A stretch of DNA of 39,644 nt from contig NC_068991.1 in assembly GCF_001194135.2 (NCBI RefSeq), positions 61,482,463 through 61,522,106 of the forward strand, given 5' to 3'. The notes below the pieces were generated by a model. That model made no database searches and was not told where the DNA came from. It saw only the letters and a list, made by a program, of their open reading frames with translations. A program made the translations under genes and the position numbers. The DNA is from Octopus bimaculoides (taxonomy: Eukaryota). Of the stretch, positions 621 through 39,557 are shown in pieces (the first letter of the stretch is position 1; each line of letters opens with the position of its first letter).

Positions 621-802
621 TATCTCACACACACACCATCAGCAGCAGCAACACGTATACAACAGAACCAAGCAACCACCACAGCAACAAAGAGAATGCA
701 GTAAGTGGTGAACGTAGGTGAAGTGGTCGGTCGTGATAACCAGGTAAATAATTTATACCAGAAAAAATTTAAAATACAGATTTTACTTTTTTATTCTTCC
801 AG

Positions 803-1288
803 ATGATTCTAAATGTAACGAGACTACTACCTGGAAACCTCATTTGCAAAATTTAACAACTGCAAAGAGAATTTCAACACTTGTACGTTCAACACCTGTA
901 ATTTCAACACCTGTAAGTTCAACATCTGTAATTTCAACACCTGTAATTTCAACACCTGTAAGTTCAACACCTGTAAGTTCAACACCTGTAAGTTCAACAC
1001 CTGTAAGTTCAACACCTGCAATTTCAACACCTGCAATTTCAACACCTGCAATTTCAACACCTGCAATTTCAACACCTATAAGTTTAACACCTGTAATTTC
1101 AACACTTGTAAGTTCAACATCTGTAAACTATTCATCCTCTGCAAATAATTCAATATTTCAAACGAGCTCCACAACTACGAGGGATGAAACCAAAAACAAA
1201 AATGAAATTATTTTGTGGGCTGTTATTGGCAGTTTAGCTGCTATAATTACGGCTTTCAGTTTCATTTGTTTCATACATTTAGCAAAAA
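803..1288 (+). CDS. Internal coding exon: mucin-like S/T/P stalk + transmembrane helix of a type I membrane receptor (probably IL-17R-like)
   Basis: Polypyrimidine tract + AG acceptor (ttttactttttt attcttccAG, 801-802) and GTAAGT donor (1289-1294). The 486-nt exon is open and phase 1 at both ends. It reads DSKCNETTTW..(ISTPV/SSTPV/ISTPA)n..KNKNE-IILWAVIGSLAAIITAFSFICFIHLA-K, with N-glycosylation sequons NET, NLT, NYS and NNS before the hydrophobic helix (~1207-1284). Confidence 0.85.
871..1125 (+). repeat. Coding minisatellite, 17 x 15 bp (aatttcaacacctgt / aagttcaacacctgt), encoding pentapeptides [I/S]STP[V/A]
   Basis: Counted directly: 17 in-frame units from ISTLV to SSTSV, with variants in homogeneous blocks. 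Confidence 0.95.
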
Positions 1289-1469
1289 GTAAGTTGATAT
1301 TTTTACACCTGCTAATTCCATTGTATTGCTTCACAAAAACTGTGGGTTGTATAGATCTGCAAATTCAAATGATTTAGCCTTAGTTTATTGTAACACTGCA
1401 CTTTAAAAAATCAATTGCACATATAGGAGCTAACTCAGACAAAGTATAAATATGTAAGTTAACAAAGGA

Positions 1470-1650
1470 TTTATATGTGGTCACTTGACCTGCTCGAAAA
1501 TGTTGCCAGATTTCTCTCACATCACATCTCATAGTTTTAAGTAACAAAGGCTGAAATGGGCAGCGACACGCAAAAGGATAGGATGGTAATGGTTTGGAAT
1601 GCTTTAATCATTAGTCTGCTCAATTAGAGTTTAGTTGGGGGTGTTTATAC
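1470..1650 (+). mobile_element. Degenerate SINE 3' fragment
   Basis: gtggtcacttgacctgctcgaaaat..gccagatttctctcacatcaca..aaaaggataggatgg..ggaatgctttaatcat resembles a repeat tail also seen degenerate on - near 32880-32930. Confidence 0.4.
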
Positions 1651-1944
1651 ATCATCAATGCACACACACATATCAAAAGTACCTTCTGCATGAGGAACGT
1701 ACAATTAAATGTAATTTACCACATATGACATGGCAAGCTGAATATAATTTCGATCAATAGACNNNNNNNNNNNNNNNNNNNNNNNNNNNNNNNNNNNNNN
1801 NNNNNNNNNNNNNNNNNNNNNNNNNNNNNNNNNNNNNNNNNNNNNNNNNNNNNNNNNNNNNNNNNNNNCATAACATGGCCTTTTACGTAGCATTGGCACA
1901 GGGTTCTTGCTGGCCAATCCTCTTCATTGGTGGTCAGTGGGATG

Positions 1945-2620
1945 AAGGTAGCCTGCAGAAGAATATCATAAAAGTGATCCTTCTGTTCACTTAGTAGGCC
2001 CGCTTGTAGAGCATAGGCAGAGATAATTGTAGCTATACCATTCTGCAAGTCTTACCTGAGTTTAAGAACTCCATCGCACACCCTCACTACTTCTATGACC
2101 TTATCCATCCATTCCTCTGCAAGAAGTATGCCCACACCCCCTATTCCATCACTATTACCTTCCCAGAAGAGTTTATACCTATGTACTTTGCCTGTGAGGA
2201 CTCTGACTGAAGCTCCTCTCCACCTTACCTCTTGTATGCAACATACATCGACACGTTTCCATTCAAGCATCTCTACAATCTCACAAACTTACCTTTCATT
2301 GTGCATACATTTACAGTGCCAACTCTGAAAACTGGGAAAGAGATATGGGAGGTAACACAGGAAGGAGAGATATTATTCAACACCTGAAAAGGAGGTCCCC
2401 GCGATCGTTTGGTATCAGACGTCATAATAGTTGTTCTTACTTGTAACCTACCTTCATTCGAACATGTTAGAATTGTTAAGGTTGTTGTCTCTACTGGGGG
2501 GTGGGGGAGTAAGAAAGCATTGTATATGAAGTGTTTGGGGCATTGTAAATATAAGCATTATGAGCATTGTGGATGTAAGCATTACTGATGCTGCAGATAT
2601 TAATGTAGAAGAAAGTAAGA
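1945..2620 (-). mobile_element. RTE-clade LINE 5' fragment (5'UTR + AP-endonuclease N-half, frameshifted)
   Basis: VDVCCIQEVRWRG..YKLFWEGNSDGIGGVGILL..VRVCDGVLKLR and IATIISAYALQAGL..EQKDHFYDILLQAT are RTE APE motifs. The upstream 2330-2610 is homologous to 8200-8488. Confidence 0.88.
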
Positions 2621-2910
2621 TATAATATAACCAACATAAGTTTCAAAGTAAGGCTAAATAAATAGGTGTGACTAAGATGTTTGATTATGGAGTTATGTGT
2701 TACTTTAATTGGCTGTTTTAGAATTTTTCGTTTTCACTGTTTAGTGAACAGACATTGATTTGTTTGTTTTGTTTTTGTGTTGCCCCATGTTAATTTATTT
2801 TCCTTTTCATTTTTTTTTTATTTTGTTAAATATTTTTTTTAATATGTTACATCAAATCAATTTCACTTTTTATTGGAGAGCAAAGTTATGTTGAGAATGA
2901 ATTTTTTGAG

Positions 2911-2911
<1 letters not shown>

Positions 2912-2984
<73 letters not shown>

Positions 2985-3026
2985 TACATATACACACACA
3001 CACACATATATGTATATATATATATA
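2912..3026. repeat. (TA)n/(CA)n microsatellite
   Basis: Direct reading. Confidence 0.95.
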
Positions 3027-3230
3027 AGTTCAAAAAAGGAAAACGGCAAAAAAACAACAAAAAAACAACAACGTGAGGAGGTGATACAGATTGTGTTACT
3101 AGATGCTTGGGAAAGGAAAGAAAGAGAATATGACGTTTCGAGCGGAGCTCTTCGTCGGACACTTAGGAAAGTCCAAAGAAGAGAAAGACAGAGGAAGAAA
3201 AAATCGCCAACGATATCCACGAGGTTACAT
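3027..3230 (-). mobile_element. Penelope-like terminal-repeat (pLTR) fragment
   Basis: Contains a minimal hammerhead motif. Same layout as the degenerate terminus at 25850-25990 (gacgttt.gagc..gctc.tt). Confidence 0.5.
3127..3163 (-). ncRNA. Minimal type I hammerhead ribozyme motif (one core substitution)
   Basis: Minus strand: agtgt CcGACGA a GAGC-tcc-GCTC GAAAC GTC atatt. Core CUGANGA has U4->C. Stem II is 4 bp, stem III is the palindrome ACGT, the cleavage triplet is GUC, and stem I has 5 bp with 2 G.U pairs. Confidence 0.55.
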
Positions 3231-3275
3231 ATACATACATACATACATACATATATGTATATATGTATATATATA

Positions 3276-3590
3276 TGACAAGTAACTGAGACCTTTGGCA
3301 ATATGCTCTGCTTGAGAAGACTCGTTAAGCCAAGTGAAATCGTAGTCATCGCCAGTGTCATGTAAATGGCACCTGTGCTGTTGGCACGTTGAAAACACCC
3401 ATTGCACTCTTGGAGTGGTTGGCGTTAGGAAGGACATTATGAAGGTCATTGCTGTAGAAGCCATGTCAAAATCAGACTGAAACCTGGTGCAGCCCTCTGG
3501 CTCACCAGTTCCAGTCAAACTGTCTAACCCATGCCAGCATGGAAAGCGGAAAATAAATGATGATGATGATGGTGATGATGATGGTAGTGA
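3276..3590 (+). mobile_element. RTE LINE 3' end (last codons + 3'UTR + (GAT)n tail)
   Basis: gagacctttggcaatatgctctgcttgagaagactcg (end of RTE ORF), then ggagtggttggcgttaggaagg..cccatgccagcatggaaagcgg..gatgatgat. Confidence 0.85.
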
Positions 3591-3655
3591 CTGGGGACAA
3601 CATGTGATGGTGCATTCCGTCTGAAACACCAAACACGAACTTTATACCTCAACAG

Positions 3656-3753
3656 TAAATGATGACTACGACTACAATGTCCATGCTATCCAATGCTCTC
3701 GCTCTCACAGTGGGTCATTTGATCCATTTCAGCACCAGCTGCGGTCAATCATC
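3656..3753 (+). CDS. Probable 5' part of the terminal cytoplasmic exon of the same receptor, running into the N gap
   Basis: Acceptor ctttatacctcaacAG (3654-3655) is phase 1, compatible with the phase 1 donor at 1289. Open frame NDDYDYNVHAIQCSRSHSGSFDPFQHQLRSII is in the same coordinate frame as the ORF after the gap. An extra small exon in between cannot be excluded. Confidence 0.55.
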
Positions 3754-4425
3754 NNNNNNNNNNNNNNNNNNNNNNNNNNNNNNNNNNNNNNNNNNNNNNN
3801 NNNNNNNNNNNNNNNNNNNNNNNNNNNNNNNNNNNNNNNNNNNNNNNNNNNNNNNNNNNNNNNNNNNNNNNNNNNNNNNNNNNNNNNNNNNNNNNNNNNN
3901 NNNNNNNNNNNNNNNNNNNNNNNNNNNNNNNNNNNNNNNNNNNNNNNNNNNNNNNNNNNNNNNNNNNNNNNNNNNNNNNNNNNNNNNNNNNNNNNNNNNN
4001 NNNNNNNNNNNNNNNNNNNNNNNNNNNNNNNNNNNNNNNNNNNNNNNNNNNNNNNNNNNNNNNNNNNNNNNNNNNNNNNNNNNNNNNNNNNNNNNNNNNN
4101 NNNNNNNNNNNNNNNNNNNNNNNNNNNNNNNNNNNNNNNNNNNNNNNNNNNNNNNNNNNNNNNNNNNNNNNNNNNNNNNNNNNNNNNNNNNNNNNNNNNN
4201 NNNNNNNNNNNNNNNNNNNNNNNNNNNNNNNNNNNNNNNNNNNNNNNNNNNNNNNNNNNNNNNNNNNNNNNNNNNNNNNNNNNNNNNNNNNNNNNNNNNN
4301 NNNNNNNNNNNNNNNNNNNNNNNNNNNNNNNNNNNNNNNNNNNNNNNNNNNNNNNNNNNNNNNNNNNNNNNNNNNNNNNNNNNNNNNNNNNNNNNNNNNN
4401 NNNNNNNNNNNNNNNNNNNNNNNNT

Positions 4426-5154
4426 GAAGCATGGGCTAATGGTTTAGAATATCCACAGTTACGAGACAACCAAAATGAAAATGTCCTAATGTCAATTCTT
4501 ACTATGATTAGAGAATGTCCTCTCTTGCAGTTATATCATTCAAAATACATCTCGTGCCGCTTGGAACACTTGTCCGAGAGTTATGTTCTCACTGAATTTC
4601 CTTCGGTTCAAAATTTCGTTCTGACCAGAGACCTGAAGAAGTTGGTTTACTATATCCATCATATTTCACCTAACAGTGTTCTCAAATCATTAACGTTGAG
4701 ATCTTCTGATAGCTTGAATTCAGCAATGGCACTACAGCAAGCAGCTCAAAAAGCTGTTGAATTTGAAAAAAATGAAATGTGGTTTACTCAGAAGTACAGT
4801 TACTTGGTGCCACGTTGTGGCATATTAAACAACAAATGCTATTGCCGTTCTGCATTAAATGAAGAATCCGACGGCACTGTTAGTATTCCCAAATTACCAC
4901 AGAACACCTTTCATGATGTGAATTTCGATGATTCCATATCCACTCAGTGCTATTATTCCAATGATATATACTCCATTTCGGAAACGTCACAGATCAGTTC
5001 TGAACTAGCAATGCTAAATGATCGCAATGACCAGCAATATAAGAACAGACACAGCCTCTTGCCTTCATTGTCTGAAGGTGTCACAGACTGTGTGAGCAAC
5101 TGGACAGATATAACATATGCCTCTAGTCGTGGTTCAAATCCAGTGTGTGTTTGA
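4426..5154 (+). CDS. C-terminal half of a SEFIR domain plus SEFIR extension and cytoplasmic tail; IL-17 receptor-like protein (IL17RA/IL17RD type)
   Basis: 243-codon open frame from the gap edge to TGA 5152-5154, in non-repetitive sequence. By eye, NVLMSILTMIREC..SKYISCRLEH.SESYVLTEFPSVQNFVLTRDLKKLVYYIH and ALQQAAQKAVEFEKNEMWFTQKY align with the IL17RD sequence as I recall it ([51 protein letters not shown] and [24 protein letters not shown]). No HMM search was run. Confidence 0.72.
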   Translation, partial: EAWANGLEYPQLRDNQNENVLMSILTMIRECPLLQLYHSKYISCRLEHLSESYVLTEFPSVQNFVLTRDLKKLVYYIHHISPNSVLKSLTLRSSDSLNSAMALQQAAQKAVEFEKNEMWFTQKYSYLVPRCGILNNKCYCRSALNEESDGTVSIPKLPQNTFHDVNFDDSISTQCYYSNDIYSISETSQISSELAMLNDRNDQQYKNRHSLLPSLSEGVTDCVSNWTDITYASSRGSNPVCV

Positions 5155-5188
5155 AAGAACCAAGGCAGGTGGGTTCATATCTGTGTGT

Positions 5189-8100
5189 ATCATCATCATC
5201 GTTTAACATCCGTTTTCCATGCTGGCATGGGTCGGACGGTTTAACTGGGGTCTGGCAAGCCAGGAAGCTGCATCAGGGTCCAATCTGATCTGGCAGTTTC
5301 TGCAGTGTGATGCCCTTCCAAATGCCAACCACTCCAAGAGTGTAGTGGGTGCTTTTTACATGCCACAGGCACAGGAGCCAGACAGGGCAAAGGGGCTGGC
5401 ATGGACCACATTCAGATGGTGCTTTTTACGTGCCACCGGCACAGGAGCCAGTCAGGACAAAGGGGTTGACATTGACCACGTTTGGATGGTACATTTTACG
5501 TGCCATTGACATGAGAAGCCAGTCAGGTGGCATTGGCAACAACCGATGCATGAATGGTGCTTATTACATGCCACCAGCATAGGAGCCAGTCAAACAGCAA
5601 TGGCATCAACCACTTAACCACAACTACAATTTCCATTTGATTGTGGTTTGATTTAATTTTGATTTTGATTCTGATGTACTTGACTCAACAGGTCTCCTCA
5701 AGCACGGCATGTTGCCCGACAATCCAAAGGAACTTTTCCAAGTGGGCTGGTTATGCAACACTGGTGTAGGCTACAGCTGTGATCTCACTTTATTTGCCGG
5801 GTCTTCTCAGTCACTGCATATCTCCAGAGGTCTCGGTCTTTCGTCATTGCCTCTGTGAGGCCCAACGTTCGAAGGTCATGCTTCACCACCTCATCCCATG
5901 TCTTCCAGGGTCTCCCTCTATCATGGCTTCCTTCCACTGTTTGGGAGTGACACTTCTGCACACAGCTCTCCACATCCATCCATACCATGACCATACCAGC
6001 ACAGTCATCTCTCTTGCATGCCACATCCGATGCTTCTTATGTCCAACATTTCTCTCAAAGTGCTTAAACTTTGTCGTATGTGCACACTGACATTACNNNN
6101 NNNNNNCATTTCTCTCAAAGTGCTTAAACTTTGTCGTATGTGCACACTGACATTACACATCCAGCGGATCATACTAGCTTCATTTCTTTCGAGCCTACAC
6201 ATGTCTTCAGCAGTCATGGACCATGTTTCATTGTCGTGAAGCATGGCAGTTCTCACACATGCATTGTACAATCTACCTTTCACTCTGAGCAAGAAGCCCT
6301 TTGTCACCAGTAGAGGTAGGAGCTGTCTGAACTTTGCCCAGGCTATTCTTATTCTAGTGGTAACGCTCTCTGGGCATCCACCCCCACTACAGACTTGGTC
6401 ACCTAGGTAGCGGAAGCTATCAACTATTTCTAGTTTCTTCCCCTAGCATGTGATGGAATCTGTTTTCTGAGCATCTGTGGTGTTTATTGCCCCTGTGCAT
6501 CTGTCACACACGAAAGCTACCTTCCTGGTTAACCTTCCTTTGATGTTGCTGCACCTCTTATGCATCCATAGTTTACATTGGGTACATCTTATGGGATTTC
6601 TACCTACACCTTTTCTACAGATCGCCCCTGGACTGGCTCTTGTGCGGGTGGCACATAAAATACACCATTTTGAGCATGGCCGTTGCCAGTACCGCTTGAC
6701 TGGCCTTCATGCGGGTGACATGTAAAAGCACCCACTACACTCTCGGAGTGGTTGGCGTTAGGAAGGGCATCCAGCTGTAGAAACTCTGCCAAATCAGATT
6801 GGAGCCTGGTGTTGCCATCCGGTTTCACCAGTCCTCAGTCAAATCGTCCAACCCATGCTAGCATGGAAAGCGGACGTTAAACGATGATGATGATGATGAT
6901 GATGAGCAGGGCCATCTGCCTGAAGGGATTTGTTATGTGTTCACCTTCCTCCTTATTAGGACTTTGGTCTTTGCAACATTGACTCTAAGGCCCTTCAATT
7001 CTAAACCTTGCTTCCACACCTGAAATTTCTTCTCTAGTTCTGGTAGTGATTCTCCTATGAGAGCCAGATCATCAGCAAAGAGGAGCTCCCAGGAGCAACC
7101 TGTCTTCAGTTCCTCTGTTATTGCCTGGAAGACTATGATGAATAAGAAGGGACTGAGAGCTGGTCCTTGGTGGACCCCTACTTCTACCTGGAATTGGATT
7201 CTTCACTATATTCATTGCCAACCCTAACCTTACTAACAGCATCCCTGTAGAGGGCCTGTACAACCATTATTAACTATTCGTCAATCCCTAGTTTCTGCAT
7301 CGCCCACCAGATAAGGGATCAGGGGACCCTATCAAAGGCTTTCTCCAAGTCCCCAAAAGCCAAGTATAGGAGTTTATCTATGGCTAGGTATTTCTCCTGC
7401 AGTTGCTGTACCAGAAATATAGCATCAGTGGTGCAAAACCAAATTGCATCTCATCTAAACAGACTCTGTCCCTAATTAGTTGGGCTATGACCTTCTCTGT
7501 AACCTTCATCACCTGATCCAGCAGTTTGATACCCCTGTAGTTATTTCTATCTAAAGTATCACCTTTACCCTTGTAACAGTTGACTATGGTGCTGTTATGC
7601 CAGTCTTTGGTTATGCTTCCTTTGTGAACTACCTGGTTTATAATATGGGTGACTAGGCCATAACCCACACCACCAGATATTTTAAGCATCTCAGCAGTGA
7701 TTCCTGATGGGCCAGGAGCTTTCTCTGTCTTCATACCCTTAATTGCTTTATCTACCAGGGTGCTGTCTATTCGGATAGCTGGTCCCTCTACTGGGTCAAC
7801 ATTTAGCAGACTCTCTTCCTCCCATCCATTCTCCACATTCAGCTGCCTTTCATAATGGCTTCTCCAAGCCTCTTTCTTTGCAGAATCATTAAAAGCAAGT
7901 GCACCATCATCCATGCGGACACATCTCTCTCTTGTGACATCACAATTTTCTCTCACACATTGTCTTACAATCTGAAATACTTCAGTTCTTTGGTCCTCAT
8001 GTTGCTGAACATTGGCAAGCTTCTTCTTTCTGCTTCTCCCTTGGCTATGTATACCTGTCGCCCAGCCTCCCTTCTGGCTATCTAGTACAGTTCCCTGGCT

Positions 8101-8488
8101 GAAGCTCCTCTCCATCTTACCGCTTGTATGCAGCATACATCAGCATGTCTCCATTCAAACATCTCTATAATCTCACTAGACCTACCTTTCAGTGTGCCTA
8201 CATTTACAGTGCCAACTTTGAAAACTGGGAAAGGAATGTGGGGTGAGGCATGGGGAGGGGAGATGTTGTTCGGCGTCTGAAAAGAAGAAGGTTTTTGTGT
8301 TCATTTGTGAGACATGCTTCACCTGTTCTCACTTCCGACCTGTCATCATTCAAACATTGAATCTTGTTAAGATTGTTGCCCCTACTAGGGGTAGGAGTAG
8401 GTGTTAGCAGCATTGTAAGTATAAGCATTATGGATATCGTAAAATCGTAAATCTAAGCATTACTGGTGTTGCAGATATACCTGTAGAA
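5189..8488 (-). mobile_element. Near full-length, internally deleted, pseudogenised RTE-clade LINE
   Basis: On -: 5'UTR (8200-8488); APE start (VCCIQAVRWRGASAR) fused to the linker; RT (NCYKGKGD.LDRNNYRGIKLLDQVMKV, DEMQFGF, WELLFADDL at ~7065-7090); Cys-rich CTQCKLWMHKRC; DSFRYLGD; C-terminus GRPWKTWDEVVKHDLRTLGL..DRDLWRYAV (5785-6024); 3'UTR and (ATC)n tail at 5189. Confidence 0.93.
6625..6905 (+). mobile_element. 5'-truncated RTE 3'UTR copy nested in the minus-strand RTE
   Basis: Splits the host motif GRWPCS|ICRKGVG (ctacagatcg | insert | gagcagggccatc) and ends in aaacgatgatgatga. Confidence 0.88.
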
Positions 8489-9090
8489 GAGGTAGACTCA
8501 GGAAGACCTGGGATGAGGTGGTGAAGTGCGACCTTTAAATGTTGGGCCTCACCGAGGGAATGACAAGTGACAGAGACCTTTGGAAATATGCTGTGCTTGA
8601 GAAGACTTGGCAAGCCAAGTGAGACCATAACCCATGGTTATACCAGTGCAGCATAACTAGCCCATTTAAGAGTACCCTTCAATCATTGGGCAATAAACTG
8701 CACTTGCAAAGACGTGTTGAAGCAAGTGAAGTCATTGTTGGGGCCGATGACAGTACCATCTGGTTGCCACCCATACCAGTGGCACGTAAAAAGCACCATT
8801 TGAGCATGGTCGATGCCAGTGCCGCCTCACTGGTCCTGTGCCGGTGGCACGTAAAAAGCACCATTTGAGCGTGGTCGTTGCCAGTACTGCTTGACTGGCC
8901 TTCGTGCCAGTGGAATGTAAAAAGCACCTACAGCAATATCAGAGTGGTTGGCGTTAGAAAGGGCATTCAGATGTAGGAGCTTTGCCAGATAGGATTGGAC
9001 CTGGGTGCAGCCTCCTGGCTTGCCAGCCCTCAATCAAACCGTCCAACCCATGCCAGCATGGAAACGGACGTTAAACGACGACGATGACAT
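8482..9090 (+). mobile_element. 5'-truncated RTE LINE 3' end
   Basis: GRLRKTWDEVVKCDL*MLGLTEGMTSDRDLWKYAVLEKTWQAK*, then a 3'UTR with ~60-bp subrepeats (ggcacgtaaaaagcaccat) and an aaacgacgacgatgac tail. Confidence 0.9.
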
Positions 9091-9270
9091 ACATACATCA
9101 TCATCCATCCATCCATCCATACATACATACATACATCCATCCATCCATCCATACATACATCCATACATGCATACATACATCATACATCATACGTACATAC
9201 ATACATTCATACATCCATACATAAATCCATCCATACATTCATACATCCATCCATCCATACATACATACAT
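9090..9270. repeat. (CATA)n/(CCAT)n microsatellite
   Basis: Direct reading. Confidence 0.9.
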
Positions 9271-9271
9271 T

Positions 9272-10091
9272 GACTGAGGAAAGAAAACCCCAAATGACCC
9301 GTCCTTGTTTTTTATTGTCCCTTTTTTGTCATCTAACTGTCTGTATGTTTTGTTGTTGCCTGTTGCATTTTTGTCCCATTTTTTTTGTATTCTTTTTTTT
9401 TATATATATACACATTCTTTCTTTCTTTCAGCCCCTTCATACTTACTTTGTTCTTTCCACTCTTCTTTCTTTCACCCCACTCCCTCACATTTCTTGCCCT
9501 TCCCTTCATTCTCACCTTCCTTCCTCTTTCATTTCACTCTGTCCCTTTTCTTTTTTCTTTCTTTCTTATCCCCCCTCCCTAATTCTTCTATCGCTCTGCC
9601 TCTACTTCTCTCTTCTCCTTCCACATGACCGGTGTTTGGCCAAGCCTGACCTCTCTTTCTTGGTTCGACTACCATCCGTGCAACATCTCTATTCCTTCTC
9701 ATGCCTGTCATCTCTTATGTCCCTGTCATAAGGCTTCTCTTCCACACACGCCAGCTTAATTTAATTCATCCTTAGTCGAAAGACACCTGTTGTTAATGTC
9801 CCATTATATTTGCGTACCATTTCTCTGTCATTCTTGCTGTCCTTGTTTTCATATACATTTGGTGCTTTCTTCCAAGGAATCTAATGCTCTTAGCTTAGAT
9901 TTTCCTTGAGGCTGGCCAGATCAGAGCAGTCTCAAGTATAACTAGCCAAAACTGCAAAGATAATCTGGAACTCGACTGAAGAAAGAAAACTCCGAATGAC
10001 TCATCCTTGTTTTTTCTTGTCCCATTTTTTGTCTTCTTTTTTTTGTATACTTATAGCAGCATACGTACACTTTGGTCTCTTATATGTGAGT

Positions 10092-10125
<34 letters not shown>

Positions 10126-10420
10126 GTATAAATTTTGTACGACTCTTATTCTTTCATTCTTTCTTTCAACCCCTTCACACTTCATTCCTTTCACTCTTCT
10201 TTCTTTCTCATCCCTCCCTAATTCTTCTATCCCTCTGCCTCTACTTCTCTCTTCTCTCTCCACATGACCGGTGTTCTGCCAAGCCTGACTTTTCTTTCTT
10301 GGTTCGACTACCATCCGTGCAACATCTATATTCCTTTCCATGCCTGTCATCTCTTATGTCCCTGCCGCAAGGCTTCTCTTCCACACACGCCAGCTTAATT
10401 CAATTCATCCTTAGTCTGTT
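9272..10420 (+). repeat. Partial tandem duplication of a ~705-bp pyrimidine-rich unit (about 1.6 copies)
   Basis: Both units start gactgaRgaaagaaaacYccRaatgac (9272, 9976) and share ccacatgaccggtgtt..ggttcgactaccatccgtgcaacatc..ccacacacgccagcttaatt..catccttagtc. Confidence 0.85.
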
Positions 10421-10961
10421 GTTAATATCCTGTTGTTTGCATTTCTATTTGTGTACCCACTGTGTTTCCATCACTGCCATTCCTAAATTGTAACTGTTTC
10501 TCTTTAAGTTTATTCTGCCACATTAGTAGCAGCAGGGAATTCTTTCCTTTTCAAGCTCTGATGAAATATTTGCTAAAAATTGTAATAGAATATCCTGACA
10601 GTTGTAAATTTGTATTTTACAACTGAGGATGGCGCTGTATTTCAAATTGATGCAATGCTTGCATTGTTCGATTAAATGGAGTCACCTGAAACACTTGTAT
10701 TGCATTAATACCTTGACATCTTTGTTACTTATTTGATTTTTATTCACCATACTTTGGGCTTCGCGGATAATACCGGACTGGCTTGGTGCATCAACTTAAG
10801 TGCCTTATTCAAATGAATCTTAATTATTTCTTATATATACTTTTGTATGTATATATACATACTTATATATATACATACATTTCTTATACAAACTTTTATA
10901 TGTATGTACACACACACACACACACACGCATGTGCGCGCGCACGCACACACACACACACAC

Positions 10962-11003
<42 letters not shown>

Positions 11004-11626
11004 NNNNNNNNNNNNNNNNNNNNNNNNNNNNNNNNNNNNNNNNNNNNNNNNNNNNNNNNNNNNNNNNNNNNNNNNNNNNNNNNNNNNNNNNNNNNNNNNN
11101 NNNNNNNNNNNNNNNNNNNNNNNNNNNNNNNNNNNNNNNNNNNNNNNNNNNNNNNNNNNNNNNNNNNNNNNNNNNNNNNNNNNNNNNNNNNNNNNNNNNN
11201 NNNNNNNNNNNNNNNNNNNNNNNNNNNNNNNNNNNNNNNNNNNNNNNNNNNNNNNNNNNNNNNNNNNNNNNNNNNNNNNNNNNNNNNNNNNNNNNNNNNN
11301 NNNNNNNNNNNNNNNNNNNNNNNNNNNNNNNNNNNNNNNNNNNNNNNNNNNNNNNNNNNNNNNNNNNNNNNNNNNNNNNNNNNNNNNNNNNNNNNNNNNN
11401 NNNNNNNNNNNNNNNNNNNNNNNNNNNNNNNNNNNNNNNNNNNNNNNNNNNNNNNNNNNNNNNNNNNNNNNNNNNNNNNNNNNNNNNNNNNNNNNNNNNN
11501 NNNNNNNNNNNNNNNNNNNNNNNNNNNNNNNNNNNNNNNNNNNNNNNNNNNNNNNNNNNNNNNNNNNNNNNNNNNNNNNNNNNNNNNNNNNNNNNNNNNN
11601 NNNNNNNNNNNNNNNNNNNNNNNNNN

Positions 11627-11958
11627 GGTGGTAACAATTCAAAGTGAATTACTACTTTGCAATCCCACCAGACAGAGAGAACCTTTTTCCCATGAAGTTC
11701 CCGTCTCGGTTGTGGTTGAGCTTTTTCCCTTTTATCAAGCCACTGTTTATGATGATAGAAGATCCATTTTTCGTCACCAGTCACATGTCTATCCAAAAAG
11801 GGTGAAATGTGTTCGTGAGAATGGAGAGAAGAGCAGATGCCAGCTTGGGATTTGCGGTTGCTTTCGGACAATTCACGAGGCACCCATTTTCCAAGTTTAG
11901 GAACCTTTCCAAGTTGTTGAAGATGACGATGAACAGTTGTATGGTTTGAACTAAGCTC
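11627..11958 (-). mobile_element. Mariner transposase fragment (Hsmar1/SETMAR-like)
   Basis: NHTTVHRHLQQLGKVPKLGKWVPRELS..FLDRHVTGDEKWIFY..ELHGKKVLSVWWDCKVVIHFELLP: WVP.EL motif and first catalytic Asp. Continues into the gap. Confidence 0.92.
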
Positions 11959-25844: not shown

Positions 25845-27338
25845 ATGGTTCAAATTTACAGAAAACAAATGATTAAGACAGGTGAGGGAACAACAAGCAG
25901 GTGTATTAGTTTGATGCTCAGGAAGAATGGAAAAGTCTTTGACGTTTAGAGCCTATGCTCTTTGATAGAAAGAACAAAGAGGAAAAAAACGGATAGAGGA
26001 GAAAATGTGGACAGATTAACAGTTCAACACAATGAAATGACCAGAAGAAAGAGGTAGTGGAAGGGAGATAATAATGATGACCTGGCTGAACTAGAGAGCA
26101 CAAGCATGTGTGTGGATGTAAGTATGGTGGGTGTGAGTGAAGATGTGTGAATGGGGATGAGTGCATATAACTGTATGTGTGGGTGAGCTTAAAATTATGT
26201 GGGCCTGTGTGTATGTATGAAATCGTGTGTGTGTGTGTGCATGTGTATAAGTAACCTAGTGCAAACATTGTGTAGAGTGAAGTGCATTTGTGTGTGTGTT
26301 TGTGTGTGTGTGCATATGGATATGTGTATACATGTGTGAGGCTGTGTGTAGTACATGTATGAGAGGTGTGTGTGCATGTGTATAAGTAACCTAGTGCAAA
26401 CATTGTATAGAGTGAGGTGCATTTGCGTGTGTGCATATGGATATGTGTATACATGCATAAGGCTGCATGTAGTACGTGTGTGTGCATGTGCAAACACTTG
26501 TGTGTGCTTGTTCAAGTGGTGTGTGCATGTGTGTGTATGTGTTAGTGCTTGAAGTGTTTGTGTGTGAGTGATTGTATAGTGCGCATGTATTTTGTGTATG
26601 TTTATGCGCAGAAGTTGTATGTATTTATGCGTATTGTGTGCATGTGTATATTGTCTGTGCTCAGGTGTGTTGTGTGCAGATGCATTGTGTATTTTCTTAG
26701 GAGTGAATACTGTGTGTTGTGGGGGGAATGTATGGAGGTGTGAGGTGGGATGAGGTGACAAGAGTTAAGGGTTGGGAGGTATTGGGTGCAAGTGTGTGTG
26801 GAGTAGGAAGGTGTGTGTAAATGCATGTGCATGTGAGTGTGTGTAGGAGTGTCCATGATGGTGTGTGCGGCGGGTACTGGGAGATGTTGGGTGCTAGTGT
26901 ATGTTCATGTGAGTGTGTTTGTAATGGTGTGTGATGTGAGTACTGAGTTGAACAGTGTGTATAGGTGTTTGTATAATGGTGGTGTGGTGAGAGTACTGAG
27001 TTAGCTGGTGTACAGATATGGGGTGGAAAGGAAGTTAAAGGTGGGAGGTGTGTGGGAATATGTGTGGGTTGGTTTTAGATGAAGAGAGATGGTGAATTAA
27101 GGCCATAAGGAGCAAAGAAACGAAGGGAGAAGATTAATTCTTGTTTACGGCAGAGGCAGGGGTGGTTGTGGCCTCTGTGCAAAAACAGTTAAACAGTCCG
27201 AATGCAGACAGATGTTGTAGTGAATGACTGGTTGAGCAGAAGTAGCATGAGACTGAGGTGTCATTGCCAAGTCTGATGTCTCAGAGGTGCTCAGTGAAAC
27301 TGTTGGCTAAGCAGCATCCCATTTGACCAATGTACAAG

Positions 27339-27376
<38 letters not shown>

Positions 27377-27702
27377 AGGAGATGCAGTGACATTGTTAGA
27401 AGTGCAGGTAAAAGTGTTGGTGATGTGATAGGAGATGGGGGGGTACCAGTGAGGATAGGGGTGTTGGAGAGGAAAAGGCAGATGCAACAGCATATGCAAG
27501 AGCAGGGGAAGGAACCAGGTTGGGTGGCAAGGGCAGTTTGGATAAAGATGAGGAGATATCCATATACAGTGAAATGGCAAGCCATGTGTTGAGACTGGGT
27601 CTCAAAGACATGGTCATCACTTCACTGCAGATGCGGCACAGATGGAGGAACTGGGAGTAGGGGATGGACAGTTTAGTGTGGGTAGGGTGGGAGGAAGAGG
27701 TA
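25845..27702 (-). mobile_element. 5'-truncated Penelope-like retroelement (RT thumb, Cys linker, GIY-YIG endonuclease, long TG-rich 3' region, terminal repeat)
   Basis: On -: SHPTHTKLSIPYSQFLHLCRICS (thumb, cf. IPYSQFLRLRRICS), GSFPCSCICCCIC, HITNTFTCTSNNV, YIGQMGCCLANSFTEHL*DIRLGNDTSV..STSHSL, and a degenerate QELIFSL..APYGLN end at ~27075. Degenerate hammerhead-like terminus at ~25933-25972. Confidence 0.85.
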
Positions 27703-27748
27703 AATATATTTATGTATAAATAAACATATATGAATATATATGCATATA

Positions 27749-27798
<50 letters not shown>

Positions 27799-27928
27799 CT
27801 CCTAATTAATAAATAACTCGGACAAAATAAATTGGTTAATAGATACCAGGGTAGCAAAGATCACAAAATGACTGTGGTGTAACTCCTGTTTATGAGGTAG
27901 AAACTCCTTGTTATTTTGGGTACTTGAG

Positions 27929-28020
27929 TATATATAAATTTAGTGGAGTAAAATGCATATGTTAACTGCATATGCAGTTAACATATGCGTTTTACTCCAT
28001 TCACTAAATTTATATATATA
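27929..28020. repeat. Loopless palindrome: perfect 34 bp (27955-27988) inside a ~92-bp near-perfect hairpin
   Basis: gcatatgttaactgcat|atgcagttaacatatgc, extended by ggagtaaaa/ttttactcc and tatataaatttagtg/cactaaatttatata (one 4-nt bulge). Confidence 0.95.
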
Positions 28021-35844: not shown

Positions 35845-36128
35845 TCATCATCATCACCGTTTAATGTCCTCCTTCCGTGCTGGAATGGGTTGGACGGTTT
35901 GACAGGAGCTGGTCAGGAAGAAGACTGTACCAGACTTCTGTGTCTGTTTTGGCACAGTTTTTACGGCTGGATGCCCTTCCTAACACCAACCACCCTGCAG
36001 AGTGGACTGAGTGGTTTTTACATGGCATGAGCACAGGCGAGGTCAGGGTTGGCATGGTTTGTGCAGCTGGATGCCTTTCCAAGCTGCCAACCACTTTACA
36101 GTGCGGACTGGATGCTTTTTACATGGCA
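35845..36128 (-). mobile_element. RTE-type 3' tail with an internal tandem duplication
   Basis: catcatcatcaccgtttaatgtcc..gggttggacggtttgac; the unit gctggatgcc.ttcc..ccaaccac..ttttacatggca occurs twice. Confidence 0.8.
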
Positions 36129-36371
36129 AATCATGTATATAAACTGTTTTCCTTTCTCCAAGATAATCTGTGGGGATAGGAAAAAAAGGACATTAAACTG
36201 ATACATTAACAATAATGATTGTGATTGTAACGATGATGATGATAATGATTATAAGAGAGCATATACCTAGCACTTCCCCTCTAGCTTTTCAATGAAATGG
36301 ACCAATCACAACCCATTTTCCTTTTCTTGGTTGGTGGAATTTAGACATTAAGAAGTTAAGCAACCATCTTT

Positions 36372-36432
36372 TCATCATCATCATCGTCGTTTAACGTCCG
36401 CTTTCCATGCTAGCATGGGTTGGACGATTTGA
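36372..36432 (-). mobile_element. Extreme 3' tip of RTE tail
   Basis: catcatcatcatcgtcgtttaacgtccgctttccatgctagcatgggttggacgatttgac. Confidence 0.85.
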
Positions 36433-37184
36433 CTTTACACAAACCACCAAGACTGAGCGATATAAAGAAACCATACTTTTTGTCAAACAAACTCACTCTC
36501 AAAGTATTAGTCAGGCCAGGGTCATTGTACAAGACAATCACCCAAGGTACTGCGCAGTGGGATTGAACCAGAAACCACATTGTTATGAAGCAGAATTCTT
36601 AGCCACATAATTGTATTGGCACCTATGATGATAGATGGTTCAATGGTCCAAGGCAATTTGGCTGGTATGTTTAGTAACCAGAGTAACTAAACAAAGATTT
36701 CATCAGTGGTTCATAGCTGGCTGGNNNNNNNNNNNNNNNNNNNNNNNNNNNNNNNNNNNNNNNNNNNNNNNNNNNNNNNNNNNNNNNNNNNNNNNNNNNN
36801 NNNNNNNNNNNNNNNNNNNNNNNNNNNNNNNNNNNNNNNNNNNNNNNNNNNNNNNNNNNNNNNNNNNNNNNNNNNNNNNNNNNNNNNNNNNNNNNNNNNN
36901 NNNNNNNNNNNNNNNNNNNNNNNNNNNNNNNNNNNNNNNNNNNNNNNNNNNNNNNNNNNNNNNNNNNNNNNNNNNNNNNNNNNNNNNNNNNNNNNNNNNN
37001 NNNNNNNNNNNNNNNNNNNNNNNNNNNNNNNNNNNNNNNNNNNNNNNNNNNNNNNNNNNNNNNNNNNNNNNNNNNNNNNNNNNNNNNNNNNNNNNNNNNN
37101 NNNNNNNNNNNNNNNNNNNNNNNNNNNNNNNNNCGTTACTATCACCATCATCACCAATTTTTTCCCCCCCTTCCATAGGTGCAA

Positions 37185-37605: not shown

Positions 37606-37749
37606 ACAGAAAATGGATGAATTCAATAGAAGAAAAATACACACACACACACATACCATCATCATGATCACCACTACCACCACCATCACCATCCTCAACC
37701 TCATTATCATCATCATCGTCGTCATCATCATGTCACCACCACCACTACC

Positions 37750-37890
37750 ACAGTCATTTAATATCCATTTTCCCATTCTGGCATGCTTTCGACAGTTTGG
37801 ACAAGATTCTTCGGTAAGCAGCAAGGGTTGAGTCGAGCTCTATTGCCAACTTTGGTATGATTTCTACAGCTGGATGCTATTCCTAATGCC
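37750..37890 (-). mobile_element. Degenerate RTE 3' tail
   Basis: tttaatatccattttcccattctggcatg..ttctacagctggatgctattcctaatgcc, next to a CAT/CAC tract. Confidence 0.65.
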
Positions 37891-38027
37891 TTTCCTAATC
37901 AAAAAACAATATATACAGAAAACAAAAATTCATTCCCAAAATGAAAAAAGAAAAACAACCTCTCTTGCCCACACATGCACACAAAATTACACATCTGCAT
38001 ACATATAAACACACTCATATATATATA

Positions 38028-38272
38028 CTGTTGTGTCTGGGGAGAGTCATTTTCTTGTTGTGCCTTGAAATTTAACACACTCACCATTAAAATTTCCACT
38101 TATTTCTTATTCTTATTTTCCTAAAATTTTCGTTGCGTTTTGCAACCTTATCAATAGTCTTGACTCAACAAAATTTTAGGAAAATAAAAATAAGAAATAA
38201 GTGGAAATTTTACCGGTGAGTGTGTTAAATTTCAAGGCACAATAAGAAAATGACTCTCCCCAAACACAACAG
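38028..38272. repeat. Fold-back element: 103-bp inverted arms (38028-38130 / 38170-38272), 39-bp spacer
   Basis: ctgttgtgtctggggagagtcattttc..ttcctaaaatttt vs aaaattttaggaa..gaaaatgactctccccaaacacaacag, with about 5 mismatches. Confidence 0.93.
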
Positions 38273-39557
38273 AATATGCTTCAACACNNNNNNNNNNNNN
38301 NNNNNNNNNNNNNNNNNNNNNNNNNNNNNNNNNNNNNNNNNNNNNNNNNNNNNNNNNNNNNNNNNNNNNNNNNNNNNNNNNNNNNNNNNNNNNNNNNNNN
38401 NNNNNNNNNNNNNNNNNNNNNNNNNNNNNNNNNNNNNNNNNNNNNNNNNNNNNNNNNNNNNNNNNNNNNNNNNNNNNNNNNNNNNNNNNNNNNNNNNNNN
38501 NNNNNNNNNNNNNNNNNNNNNNNNNNNNNNNNNNNNNNNNNNNNNNNNNNNNNNNNNNNNNNNNNNNNNNNNNNNNNNNNNNNNNNNNNNNNNNNNNNNN
38601 NNNNNNNNNNNNNNNNNNNNNNNNNNNNNNNNNNTATATATATATATATATATATATGTATATCTATATATGTATGTATATCTATATATATATATGGTCA
38701 AACACATACATACACAAATACATACCCAGTCACACTGAAGATATTTACAAAAATAATTTTGTTCCAAACGTTTTTTTATCAAAGTGATCCATCAGTGGCC
38801 AGACATGTTATAAGTATCGACACAGAATAAAACAGACATTGCTCCCCCACCCTGGGGTGGGAGTGAGTATGATAAGTAATTATTATGCGTAGAGAGAAGT
38901 GGTGGTGGTGGGGGAGCAGATTCCTTTACATTCTTTCTCATTTTTATTTTTCTTACATTTTTTTTTCTTATGTATTTCCAATCGTCACCATCTTTTTTCA
39001 AAGCACAGACGTCTGATTAGTACTTTGCCTCTTTTAATATATTTTGATATTTATGAAGAATATCATTGTTATTATAATTACTATTATTATTATTGCTGTT
39101 GTATTTCGGGATGGTTATCTTATTTATTATTATGATTATTTTTATTATTATAATTTTTACCAAATAAAAACAAAGACCAGTGCATGTATTTATTTGGCAA
39201 AAAATAAATAAATAAAATAAAAAAATAAATAAAATGACTATCCCAAAATACAACAACATCAGTTTCAACACACGATTTCACATCAGGAATCTTGCAAAAC
39301 AAATTGATATTATTATTATTATCATTATTATTATCCTCTTCTTTCAGTTTTGTTTCCATTTCTCCGAGTGTCTTCCCGACACCTAGTGCAAAGAAATTCA
39401 CTGTATACATTGGTAGGCCCATTAAAATGAACACCAGATTGCTCATTTACAAAGTCATGTGATAGAAAAAAAAAGTGGAAGAAAGAAAGAAAAAGAAAAG
39501 AAAAAATAATAAAATAAATTGTTATTACTATTATTGTTGTTGTTGTTGTTGTTGCTG

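What the first reader, a model, noticed from the sequence alone, without database searches (positions are those of the whole stretch)
803..5154. IL-17-receptor-like (SEFIR) gene with a long mucin-type stalk directly above the membrane
Seen in sequence: a clean exon with a 17-unit S/T/P repeat + TM, and a downstream ORF whose motifs align by eye to the SEFIR C-half and the post-SEFIR W-F extension of IL17RA/RD. Established: vertebrate IL-17Rs have FnIII ectodomains without a long tandem mucin stalk, and octopus genomes are reported to have a large IL-17 ligand expansion while their receptors are poorly characterised. Inference: a lineage-specific IL-17R architecture in which an O-glycosylated spacer raises the ligand-binding domain (encoded upstream of the window). 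The tail ends in V-C-V, a possible class II PDZ ligand.
Basis: partly seen in the sequence, partly recalled or inferred. Interest (0 to 1): 0.78.

Follow-up and report, generated by a model that had tools for sequence, protein, structure and literature searches.

The report
Octopus IL-17-receptor-like gene with mucin stalk
The window holds the last two coding exons of an octopus membrane receptor of the IL-17-receptor (SEFIR) family, in which a tandem-repeat, mucin-like stalk sits just above the membrane; the gene is real and unstudied, but its counterpart is already in public octopus annotations.

Summary
Exon 803-1288 encodes 17 five-residue S/T/P units (15-nt repeat, 874-1128) followed by a transmembrane helix (1207-1275). 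ORF 4426-5154 is the C-terminal half of a SEFIR domain, an IL-17RA-like helical extension and a tail ending in VCV. The ORF alone matches nothing in Pfam or PDB. It is 82-90% identical to Octopus proteins that pass Pfam SEFIR and Ig_ILCR1. The family profile aligns to human IL-17RA SEFIR plus extension (hhalign E 3e-6). A predicted structure hits IL-17RA first. The window is collinear with the O. vulgaris gene for CAI9729818.1. That gene has the same splice sites and a 20-unit version of the same repeat, so both pieces belong to one gene.

- The proposed junction 1288->3656 is not supported. The last exon starts inside gap 3754-4424, which hides about 224 nt, including the SEFIR N-half.
- The stalk is shared with O. 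vulgaris.
- The ectodomain, seen only in relatives, is a single FN3-like domain, not the canonical pair.

dN/dS of 0.37 argues for a functional gene. O-glycosylation, IL-17 binding and PDZ binding remain inferences.

The parts
787..802 (+). Polypyrimidine tract and 3' splice acceptor (AG at 801-802) of the stalk/TM exon
   Evidence: Sequence read. The same CTTCCAG|ATGATTCT junction is present in the O. vulgaris ortholog locus L001.
803..1288 (+). Penultimate coding exon: the end of the ectodomain (DDSKCNETT), the mucin-like stalk, the TM helix and the juxtamembrane HLAK. It enters and leaves in phase 1.
   Evidence: The only stop-free frame of six. 58% identical, with gaps, to CAI9729819.1 residues 70-245 (E 5e-43). 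Collinear with L001 39574-40101.
874..1128 (+). Tandem array of 17 x 15 nt encoding S-T-P-V/A-I/S units (VNTR-like mucin repeat)
   Evidence: TRF: period 15, 16.9 copies, 91% matches. Units listed. The orthologous array in O. vulgaris has 20.2 copies.
1207..1275 (+). Transmembrane helix IILWAVIGSLAAIITAFSFICFI
   Evidence: Aligns to the TM segment of all family members.
1289..1294 (+). 5' splice donor GTAAGT
   Evidence: The context AGCAAAAAGTAAGTTGATAT is identical in L001.
1289..3753 (+). Readable part of the last intron.
   Evidence: Self-BLAST, TRF. No family protein matches here by tblastn at E<=10. 3586-3753 has no match in L001.
3754..4424 (.). Assembly gap that hides the acceptor and about 224 nt (about 75 codons) of the last exon: the juxtamembrane RESPTDKK and the SEFIR N-half (strands A-C, helices A-B)
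   Evidence: In L001 the last exon starts at 44438 (TTTCAG|GAGAAAGCCCA), and window 4425 matches L001 44662.
4426..5154 (+). Readable part of the last coding exon (242 codons plus TGA)
   Evidence: 87% identical to CAI9729820.1 residues 287-528 (E 3e-149). 89.6% nt identity to L001 44662-45691. dN/dS 0.37 against the ortholog.
4426..4647 (+). C-terminal half of the SEFIR domain (helix NENVLMSILTMIRE, strand YISC, strand FVL, helix LKKLVYYI)
   Evidence: Pfam SEFIR on relatives, the AF2 model, hhalign to IL-17RA. dN/dS 0.22.
4717..4797 (+). Helical post-SEFIR extension, including the invariant A..FE.N..WF motif (MWF at 4777-4785)
   Evidence: Invariant columns A106, E114, N116, W119, F120. AF2 helices 171-187 and 191-197 with pLDDT 80-86. 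Aligned to IL-17RA LRAALDRFRDWQVRCPDWFE.
4960..5031 (+). Conserved tail motif NDI.S.S..S..S.EL..LN.RND
   Evidence: Conserved across cephalopod members. Predicted as a helix but with low confidence.
5083..5151 (+). Distal tail TDCVSNWTDITY...SNPVCV with a hydrophobic-x-hydrophobic C-terminus (VCV at 5143-5151); stop codon at 5152-5154
   Evidence: C-termini are VCV (Octopus), VSL (Argonauta), LSM (decapodiform transcripts) and LSV (P0020). The tail was lost by a 7-nt deletion in the O. vulgaris ortholog.

Best explanation
Coordinates 803-5154 hold the last two coding exons of a type I membrane receptor of the IL-17-receptor (SEFIR) family. The genome is an Octopus, most probably O. bimaculoides. 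The gene is the positional ortholog of O. vulgaris CAI9729818.1 (UniProt A0AA36FCJ9) and O. sinensis LOC115217223.

Shown:
- The first exon encodes a 130-residue stalk that is 55% Ser/Thr/Pro, built around 17 tandem STPVx units, followed by one transmembrane helix.
- The second exon encodes a SEFIR domain, an IL-17RA-like helical extension that carries an invariant W-F motif, and a roughly 120-residue tail. The start of this exon and the SEFIR N-half are lost in an assembly gap.
- The upstream exons, known only from relatives, encode a signal peptide and a single FN3-like Ig_ILCR1 domain.

Inferred mechanism:
- The repeat is densely O-glycosylated and forms a stiff spacer of roughly 20-30 nm that holds the small ectodomain above the glycocalyx.
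- Its length changes by repeat slippage or unequal exchange (17 units here, 20 in O. vulgaris).
- Binding of an IL-17-like cystine-knot ligand, possibly together with a partner receptor, brings SEFIR domains together.
- These recruit a CIKS/Act1-type adaptor through SEFIR-SEFIR contacts and signal towards TRAF6, NF-kB and MAPK.
- The hydrophobic-x-hydrophobic C-terminus may anchor the receptor to a PDZ scaffold.
For: - Repeat, frame, TM helix and splice sites.
- Homologs: exhaustive phmmer found 5 relatives. The best is O. vulgaris CAI9729820.1 at 87% identity, E 4e-139.
- Pfam on relatives: Ig_ILCR1 (E 1e-16 to 6e-15) and SEFIR (44-46 bits, cut-off 23).
- Orthology of the stalk exon, including the STPVx array.
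- Collinearity with L001 (OX597824.1) and identical splice junctions.
- hhalign of the family profile against the verified IL-17RA 4NUX sequence: prob 88%, E 3e-6, through the WF motif.
- AF2 model: pLDDT 70-90 over residues 1-200. Foldseek top hits are 9ot1, 4nux (TM 0.65 on the target) and 5y8e.
- Ectodomain model of the ortholog: pLDDT 84, an FN3-like sandwich.
- Purifying selection: dN/dS 0.37 overall and 0.22 in the SEFIR part.
- Background: SEFIR-mediated Act1 recruitment and the IL-17RA C-extension are described in PMC4014126. The canonical IL-17R definition and the frequent degeneration of its ectodomain are in PMC11087794.
Against: - The window ORF alone has no Pfam hit at E<=10 and no PDB SEFIR hit. 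The family profile also finds nothing in PDB by sequence. SEFIR assignment therefore rests on close relatives, on profile-profile comparison and on a predicted structure.
- The SEFIR N-half and the ectodomain of this particular gene are unread.
- No transcript or protein model for this gene was found in the protein collections searched, so expression and splicing are unproven.
- Eight repeat units contain CCTGTAAGT, a good donor consensus, so cryptic splicing inside the array is possible.
- Relatives have only one FN3-like domain, whereas canonical IL-17Rs bind ligand with a double FN3. IL-17 binding is therefore uncertain.
- The ectodomain model matches generic FN3 domains, with no solved IL-17R ectodomain among the 50 matches listed.
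- Repeat number in a short-read assembly may be inaccurate.
Confidence: 0.72

Rival explanations
1. It is a SEFIR receptor that does not bind IL-17 in the canonical way. It acts instead as a co-receptor, decoy or negative regulator (comparable to what is reported for IL-17RD), or as a sensor for another ligand, with the mucin stalk serving adhesion or anti-adhesion.
For: All coleoid relatives have a mature ectodomain of only about 125 residues with one FN3-like Ig_ILCR1 domain. More distant molluscan relatives (P0020, Patella P0005) have about 190 extra N-terminal residues and a weak IL17R_fnIII_D1 signal. Canonical IL-17Rs use a double FN3 to bind ligand (PMC11087794). The ectodomain model finds only generic FN3 folds.
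Against: Ig_ILCR1 is the domain named after the C. elegans IL-17 receptor ILCR-1, and it scores well (E 1e-16). The SEFIR domain and its IL-17RA-like extension are under purifying selection. Octopus has a large IL-17 ligand repertoire that needs receptors (PMC8353272).
Confidence: 0.2
2. It is a decaying duplicate, a young pseudogene or non-expressed copy of the neighbouring SEFIR receptor gene.
For: About 14 of the 21 differences from the same-species paralog A0A0L8G137 are unique to the window copy. The O. vulgaris and O. sinensis orthologs carry a 7-nt deletion that truncates the tail. No protein model or transcript for this copy was found in the protein collections searched. Coding nucleotide identity to O. 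vulgaris (585/651, 89.9%) is no higher than in the flanking non-coding DNA (88-94%).
Against: Both exons are open over 162 and 242 codons. Splice sites are identical to the ortholog. dN/dS is 0.37 overall and 0.22 in SEFIR. The repeat array keeps its frame in both species.
Confidence: 0.06
3. The repeat is a non-coding minisatellite or an assembly artefact, or it is removed by splicing, so the mature protein has only a short stalk.
For: The unit contains GTAAGT. The O. sinensis RefSeq model for the ortholog (XP_036362960.1) starts after the repeat. Short-read assemblies mis-size such arrays.
Against: An independent assembly of O. vulgaris holds the same array in the same frame (20 units), and its annotation translates through it. 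The array is an exact multiple of 3 and is open in only one sense frame. Other family members also have S/T/P-rich stalks of 33-113 residues.
Confidence: 0.05

Closest known systems
Octopus vulgaris CAI9729818.1 / CAI9729819.1 (UniProt A0AA36FCJ9, 'SEFIR domain-containing protein') and O. sinensis LOC115217223
   Same: Positional ortholog. The DNA is collinear, the splice junctions are identical, and it has the same DDSKCNETT start, STPVx tandem stalk, TM helix, SEFIR, WF extension and tail motifs.
   Different: It has 20 repeat units against 17. A 7-nt deletion makes its protein end at ...SLSEDTV, whereas the window keeps the full tail ending in VCV. The readable part of the last exon is 82% identical in protein.
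Sister paralog: O. vulgaris CAI9729820.1, O. sinensis LOC115217418, O. bimaculoides A0A0L8G137
   Same: Same architecture and an almost identical cytoplasmic domain (87-90% identity to the window ORF), with the same VCV end.
   Different: Its stalk lacks the STPVx array. It is 33-113 residues long depending on the model and carries a short PVKTV repeat in O. sinensis.
Human IL-17RA (SEFIR plus helical C-extension; PDB 4NUX, 9OT1)
   Same: The SEFIR fold is followed by a flexible linker and helices that pack back on the domain. The W-F motif aligns. IL-17RA is the best structural and profile match (PMC4014126).
   Different: Only about 15% sequence identity. IL-17RA has a double-FN3 ectodomain with a short linker to the membrane and no mucin repeat. 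Its long CC' insertion and distal SEFEX/CBAD regions are not evident here.
C. elegans ILCR-1 and molluscan IL-17Rs (Mytilus IL17R-A to -F)
   Same: Invertebrate type I SEFIR receptors. The Pfam Ig_ILCR1 domain, named after ILCR-1, is the ectodomain of the octopus relatives (PMC7190641, PMC8353272).
   Different: Those receptors have longer ectodomains. No tandem-repeat mucin stalk is reported for them in the papers read.
Mucin-stalk type I membrane proteins (for example CX3CL1/fractalkine, TIM family, CD8)
   Same: An S/T/P-rich segment, often made of tandem repeats, lies between a small binding domain and the TM helix. In those proteins it acts as an O-glycosylated spacer (PMC4265755 for CX3CL1; the rest is established knowledge).
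   Different: The binding and signalling domains are unrelated. Glycosylation of the octopus stalk is untested.

Membership tests
IL-17 receptor family (type I SEFIR receptors) | Cytoplasmic SEFIR domain (Pfam PF08357) | tested here: met
   The window holds only the C-half, and alone it gives no Pfam hit. Relatives that are 82-90% identical score 44-46 bits against a cut-off of 23, with window residues 1-74 on profile positions of about 70-147. hhalign to IL-17RA gives E 3e-6. Foldseek top hits are IL-17RA and SEFIR structures. The N-half is hidden in gap 3754-4424.
IL-17 receptor family (type I SEFIR receptors) | Single-pass type I topology, with the TM helix between the ectodomain and SEFIR | tested here: met
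   A 23-residue hydrophobic helix at 1207-1275 is followed by basic residues (HLAK-R). Relatives have N-terminal signal peptides.
IL-17 receptor family (type I SEFIR receptors) | Double-FN3 ligand-binding ectodomain (definition in PMC11087794) | tested here: not met
   These exons lie outside the window. In the positional ortholog and all coleoid relatives only one FN3-like domain (Ig_ILCR1, E 1e-16) fits in the roughly 125-residue mature ectodomain. Two-domain forms exist in more distant molluscan relatives. PMC11087794 notes that degenerate ectodomains are common in IL-17Rs.
IL-17 receptor family (type I SEFIR receptors) | Binds an IL-17 cystine-knot ligand and recruits CIKS/Act1 | not testable with these tools
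   This needs binding and signalling assays.
IL-17RA-type SEFIR with helical C-extension | Helices after a flexible linker that pack onto the SEFIR core | tested here: met
   In the AF2 model a low-confidence linker (158-169) is followed by helices 171-187 and 191-197 with pLDDT 80-86. hhalign aligns them, including WF, to IL-17RA residues of the alphaE'-alphaG region (PMC4014126). This rests on a prediction, not a solved structure.
Mucin-like domain | Tandem repeats rich in Ser/Thr/Pro | tested here: met
   17 x 5 residues. The stalk is 55% S+T+P with 58 S/T in 130 residues.
Mucin-like domain | Dense O-glycosylation | not testable with these tools
   This needs glycoproteomics or lectin blots.
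Class II PDZ-binding C-terminus | Hydrophobic-x-hydrophobic at the carboxyl end | tested here: met
   V-C-V here. Argonauta has V-S-L, decapodiform transcripts have L-S-M and P0020 has L-S-V. The motif is absent in Patella and was lost by frameshift in the O. vulgaris ortholog. Actual PDZ binding was not tested.

The most novel reading that the evidence does not exclude
Coleoid cephalopods carry a distinct subclass of IL-17R-like receptors. The membrane-distal FN3 domain has been lost and the remaining domain sits on a stalk of variable length. In Octopus one tandem paralog turned that stalk into a VNTR mucin whose repeat number differs between species, and possibly between individuals. The repeat number would tune the reach, clustering or pathogen exposure of the receptor within the expanded octopus IL-17 system.
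Probability: 0.2. Interest if true: 0.6.

Novelty: new variant of a known kind. Interest (0 to 1): 0.4.

Why it matters
Octopus has one of the largest IL-17 ligand repertoires among invertebrates (31 genes reported; PMC8353272), but the papers searched and read here describe no characterised cephalopod receptor. This locus gives a concrete receptor candidate with three testable peculiarities:
- a single FN3-like ectodomain;
- a tandem-repeat mucin stalk that differs in length between species;
- an IL-17RA-type SEFIR extension conserved at about 15% identity to human.

That conservation suggests the helical extension, described as specific to IL-17RA among human receptors, is ancient.

On the practical side, the gene is broken by an assembly gap in this genome and no protein model for it turned up in the collections searched. 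Repertoire counts of IL-17Rs made from this assembly would probably miss it.

Tried and rejected
- Pfam scan of the 242-aa ORF alone found nothing at E<=10.
- phmmer of the ORF against PDB gave only weak Tctex-type dynein light-chain hits (E about 0.009, residues 95-185). I treat these as chance, because no Pfam Tctex hit exists and the region is a poorly conserved tail.
- The word-indexed protein search with the ORF found nothing. This was a limit of the index. The exhaustive search found the homologs.
- The family profile against PDB sequences found nothing at E<=1, so profile-profile comparison and fold comparison were needed.
- A megablast against phages was irrelevant and wasted.
It has no tblastn match to any family member, no counterpart in the orthologous locus, and the ortholog's TM exon joins the SEFIR exon directly.
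- A minus-strand reading of the repeat (3 stops) is rejected on splice sites and orthology.
- A look-up of the contigs encoding CAI9729819.1 and XP_036362959.1 found no record. The CAI9729820.1 gene range (135 kb) was too long to fetch.
- A literature search for the locus names found nothing.

Full report
**What is in the sequence**

The window is repeat-rich animal DNA with 13 runs of N.

At 873-1126 Tandem Repeats Finder reports a 15-nt unit in 16.9 copies with 91% matches. In register this gives 17 five-residue units (STPVI, STPVS, STPAI and variants) at 874-1128.

Of the six frames across 803-1288 only one has no stop; the others have 3-22. That frame is bounded by a pyrimidine tract and AG at 801-802, and by GTAAGT at 1289-1294. 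It reads DDSKCNETT, then the repeat, then a Ser/Thr-rich segment, then the 23-residue hydrophobic helix IILWAVIGSLAAIITAFSFICFI (1207-1275), then HLAK. The stalk between the last ectodomain cysteine and the helix is 130 residues, 55% S+T+P, with 58 S/T and four N-X-S/T sequons.

Downstream, the frame starting at 4426, the first base after the gap, is open for 242 codons to TGA at 5152-5154. The protein ends in VCV.

**Is the downstream ORF a SEFIR domain?**

Taken alone it is not detectable:
- Pfam gave nothing at E<=10.
- PDB sequences gave only weak Tctex-type hits that I regard as chance.
- A word-indexed protein search gave nothing.

An exhaustive phmmer search of 1.84 billion representatives found five relatives:
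- Octopus vulgaris CAI9729820.1 (87% identity over all 242 residues, E 4e-139);
- an Argonauta hians protein (62%);
- a cluster of decapodiform cephalopod transcripts (43%);
- a further transcript cluster of unknown source (30%);
- a Patella vulgata protein (34% over about 90 residues).

The full-length relatives pass Pfam's curated thresholds for SEFIR (44-51 bits, cut-off 23) and for Ig_ILCR1, the Ig-like domain named after the C. elegans IL-17 receptor ILCR-1 (E 5e-11 to 1e-16). Window residues 1-74 align to the C-terminal half of the SEFIR match.

An eight-sequence profile of the cytoplasmic region still finds nothing in PDB by sequence. Profile-profile comparison does work. I first verified my recalled human IL-17RA fragment as identical to 4NUX chain A residues 3-215. 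Against that sequence hhalign gives probability 88%, E 3e-6, over 195 columns. The alignment runs through the post-SEFIR segment, where the family's invariant A..FE.N..WF lines up with IL-17RA's LRAALDRFRDWQVRCPDWFE.

An AlphaFold2 model of the cytoplasmic domain of the O. vulgaris sister-paralog protein CAI9729820.1 has pLDDT 70-90 over residues 1-200 and is disordered beyond. It shows the alternating strand-helix pattern, a low-confidence linker, and then two helices carrying the WF motif. Its best Foldseek matches in PDB are the IL-17RA/RB/ACT1 assembly (9ot1, E 4e-7), IL-17RA SEFIR (4nux, E 5e-6, TM 0.65 on the target) and a prokaryotic SEFIR (5y8e). Everything below these is generic flavodoxin-like folds at E>3e-3.

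The 4NUX paper describes exactly this layout: the SEFIR core, a disordered 14-residue linker, then helices alphaE', alphaF and alphaG packing on the core. It calls the layout specific to IL-17RA among human receptors (PMC4014126).

**Do the two pieces belong to one gene, and what does the gap hide?**

Searching with the O. vulgaris protein brought in two more proteins: O. sinensis LOC115217418 and a second O. vulgaris protein, CAI9729819.1. Cluster look-up added the 647-residue form CAI9729818.1 (O. vulgaris), O. sinensis LOC115217223, and an O. bimaculoides protein, A0A0L8G137.

CAI9729818/19 carry DDSKCNETT, 20 STPVx units, a very similar TM helix and LAK|RESPTDKKILFLYSHDH. The window's first exon aligns to them at 58% identity, with gaps in the repeat, at E 5e-43.

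I fetched the O. vulgaris locus (L001, OX597824.1:22487420-22542744). The window is collinear with it:

| Window | L001 |
|---|---|
| 1-605 | 37675-38547 |
| 643-1405 | 39412-40221 |
| 4425-5456 | 44662-45691 (89.6% identity) |
| 5348-7427 | 45859-47571 |

The acceptor (CTTCCAG|ATGATTCT) and the donor (AGCAAAA A|GTAAGTTGATAT) of the stalk/TM exon are the same in both species.

In O. vulgaris this exon is joined directly to a last exon that starts at L001 44438 (TTTCAG|GAGAAAGCC). The split codon A|GA gives Arg, which matches the phase of the window exon ending at 1288. That start lies 224 nt upstream of the base matching window 4425. So the acceptor and about 75 codons, the juxtamembrane segment and the SEFIR N-half, lie inside the 671-N gap.

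The gap at 1763-1868 is intronic. I reject it.

The exons for the signal peptide and the Ig_ILCR1 domain lie at L001 10001-35803, which is upstream of the window. No second family member is present in the remaining 34 kb.

**Family context**

All coleoid members have the same plan:
- a signal peptide;
- one FN3-like domain (AF2 pLDDT 84, with generic FN3 folds by Foldseek);
- an S/T/P-rich stalk;
- a TM helix;
- SEFIR with the WF extension;
- an NDI.S.S..S..EL..LN.RND motif;
- mostly a hydrophobic-S/C-hydrophobic C-terminus: VCV, VSL, LSM or LSV.

Stalk length ranges from 33 to 145 residues. Only the window gene and its O. vulgaris ortholog have the STPVx array. The O. sinensis sister paralog has a short PVKTV repeat.

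Two more distant relatives, a 722-residue transcript product and the Patella protein, have about 190 extra N-terminal residues. Patella also shows a weak IL17R_fnIII_D1 signal. The coleoid proteins therefore appear to have lost the membrane-distal domain. Canonical IL-17Rs are defined by a double FN3 plus SEFIR, although degenerate ectodomains are common (PMC11087794). On that definition this is an atypical member.

**Is it functional?**

Against the positional ortholog, the readable last exon has dS 0.22, dN 0.08 and dN/dS 0.37. By segment dN/dS is 0.22 in the SEFIR part, 0.38 in the extension and 0.41 in the tail. Both exons are open and the splice sites are conserved. This argues for a functional gene under moderate constraint.

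There are caveats:
- The window copy has about 14 substitutions unique among six Octopus sequences.
- The O. vulgaris and O. sinensis orthologs have a 7-nt deletion that ends the protein at SLSEDTV, with the old tail still recognisable out of frame.
- No transcript or protein model of this exact gene was found in the protein collections searched.

**Mechanism**

Shown here: the architecture, its family, and its conservation.

Inferred from established knowledge of mucin domains and IL-17R signalling:
- The STPVx array is O-glycosylated and acts as an extended spacer. Its length drifts by slippage or unequal exchange: runs of four identical units occur within the array, and the count is 17 against 20 units between species.
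- Ligand-driven association of SEFIR domains recruits a CIKS/Act1-type adaptor.
- The WF helices stabilise the SEFIR core as in IL-17RA.
- The C-terminal V-C-V may bind a PDZ scaffold.

The main rival is that, with a single FN3-like domain, the protein is a co-receptor or regulator rather than a primary IL-17 receptor.

**Novelty and verdict**

The gene family is already present in public annotation as 'SEFIR domain-containing' or 'uncharacterized' proteins, including the mucin-stalk ortholog. I found no paper that describes it.

It is a new variant of a known kind: an IL-17R-like receptor with a single FN3-like ectodomain and a tandem-repeat mucin stalk. Interest is moderate (0.4). It is useful for anyone studying cephalopod IL-17 biology, and it shows that the IL-17RA-type extension is ancient. 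It is not a new principle.

The species is most probably O. bimaculoides. The ORF is 90% identical to A0A0L8G137 and shares residues with it that differ in O. vulgaris and O. sinensis. This is an inference.

Noticed in passing
window 4426-5076 compared with P0027, P0001 and P0028: In the last exon, paralogs within a species are more alike than positional orthologs are between species. Window against O. bimaculoides A0A0L8G137 is 196/217, and the two O. vulgaris paralogs are 204/217, but window against its O. vulgaris ortholog is only 179/217. This suggests gene conversion between the tandem paralogs, or faster change in the mucin-stalk copy.
   Followed up: partly
L001 45290-45330 against window 5075-5095: The O. 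vulgaris ortholog has a 7-nt deletion that shifts the frame and stops the protein at SLSEDTV. O. sinensis LOC115217223 has the same ending. The ancestral tail, including the VCV-like end, is still readable out of frame. The window copy is intact.
   Followed up: yes
O. sinensis LOC115217418 isoforms X1/X2 (P0026, P0024) against O. vulgaris CAI9729818 and CAI9729820: The RefSeq models join N-terminal exons almost identical to those of the mucin-stalk gene to the distal exons of the neighbouring paralog. The O. vulgaris CAI9729820 model spans 135 kb. These are either read-through or chimeric gene models, or the 5' exons are shared across the tandem pair. Isoforms X1 and X2 also differ in the number of PVKTV stalk units.
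   Followed up: no
window 6047-6096 and 6107-6156: Two 50-bp stretches that are 100% identical flank the 10-N gap at 6097-6106. This is most likely an unmerged contig overlap, an assembly artefact.
   Followed up: partly
window 3367-3585 (-), 5184-5611 (+), 6627-6905 (-), 8776-9093 (-), 35847-36128, 36363-36434: There are many copies of one interspersed SINE-like element, which begins CATCATCATCGTTTAACATCCGTTTTCCATGCTGGCATGGGT. The copy right after the stop codon contains a 70-nt internal tandem repeat (5348-5527, 2.6 copies). The same element is abundant in the O. vulgaris locus.
   Followed up: partly
window 10831-11883 (-) and 7384-8136 (-): A mariner/Tc1-type transposase fragment (Pfam Transposase_1, E 7e-11) is interrupted by gap 11004-11626. 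A 250-aa ORF at 7384-8136 looks like part of a retrotransposon by eye but has no Pfam hit.
   Followed up: partly
window 1869-3753: The contig between the two gaps has no counterpart in the orthologous O. vulgaris intron apart from repeats. It is either a lineage-specific insertion or a misplaced scaffold piece.
   Followed up: partly
window 9000-11000 and 26000-28000: Strong strand-asymmetric composition (GC skew -0.46 and +0.64) coincides with long low-complexity CA/TC-rich tracts that create spurious long ORFs.
   Followed up: no
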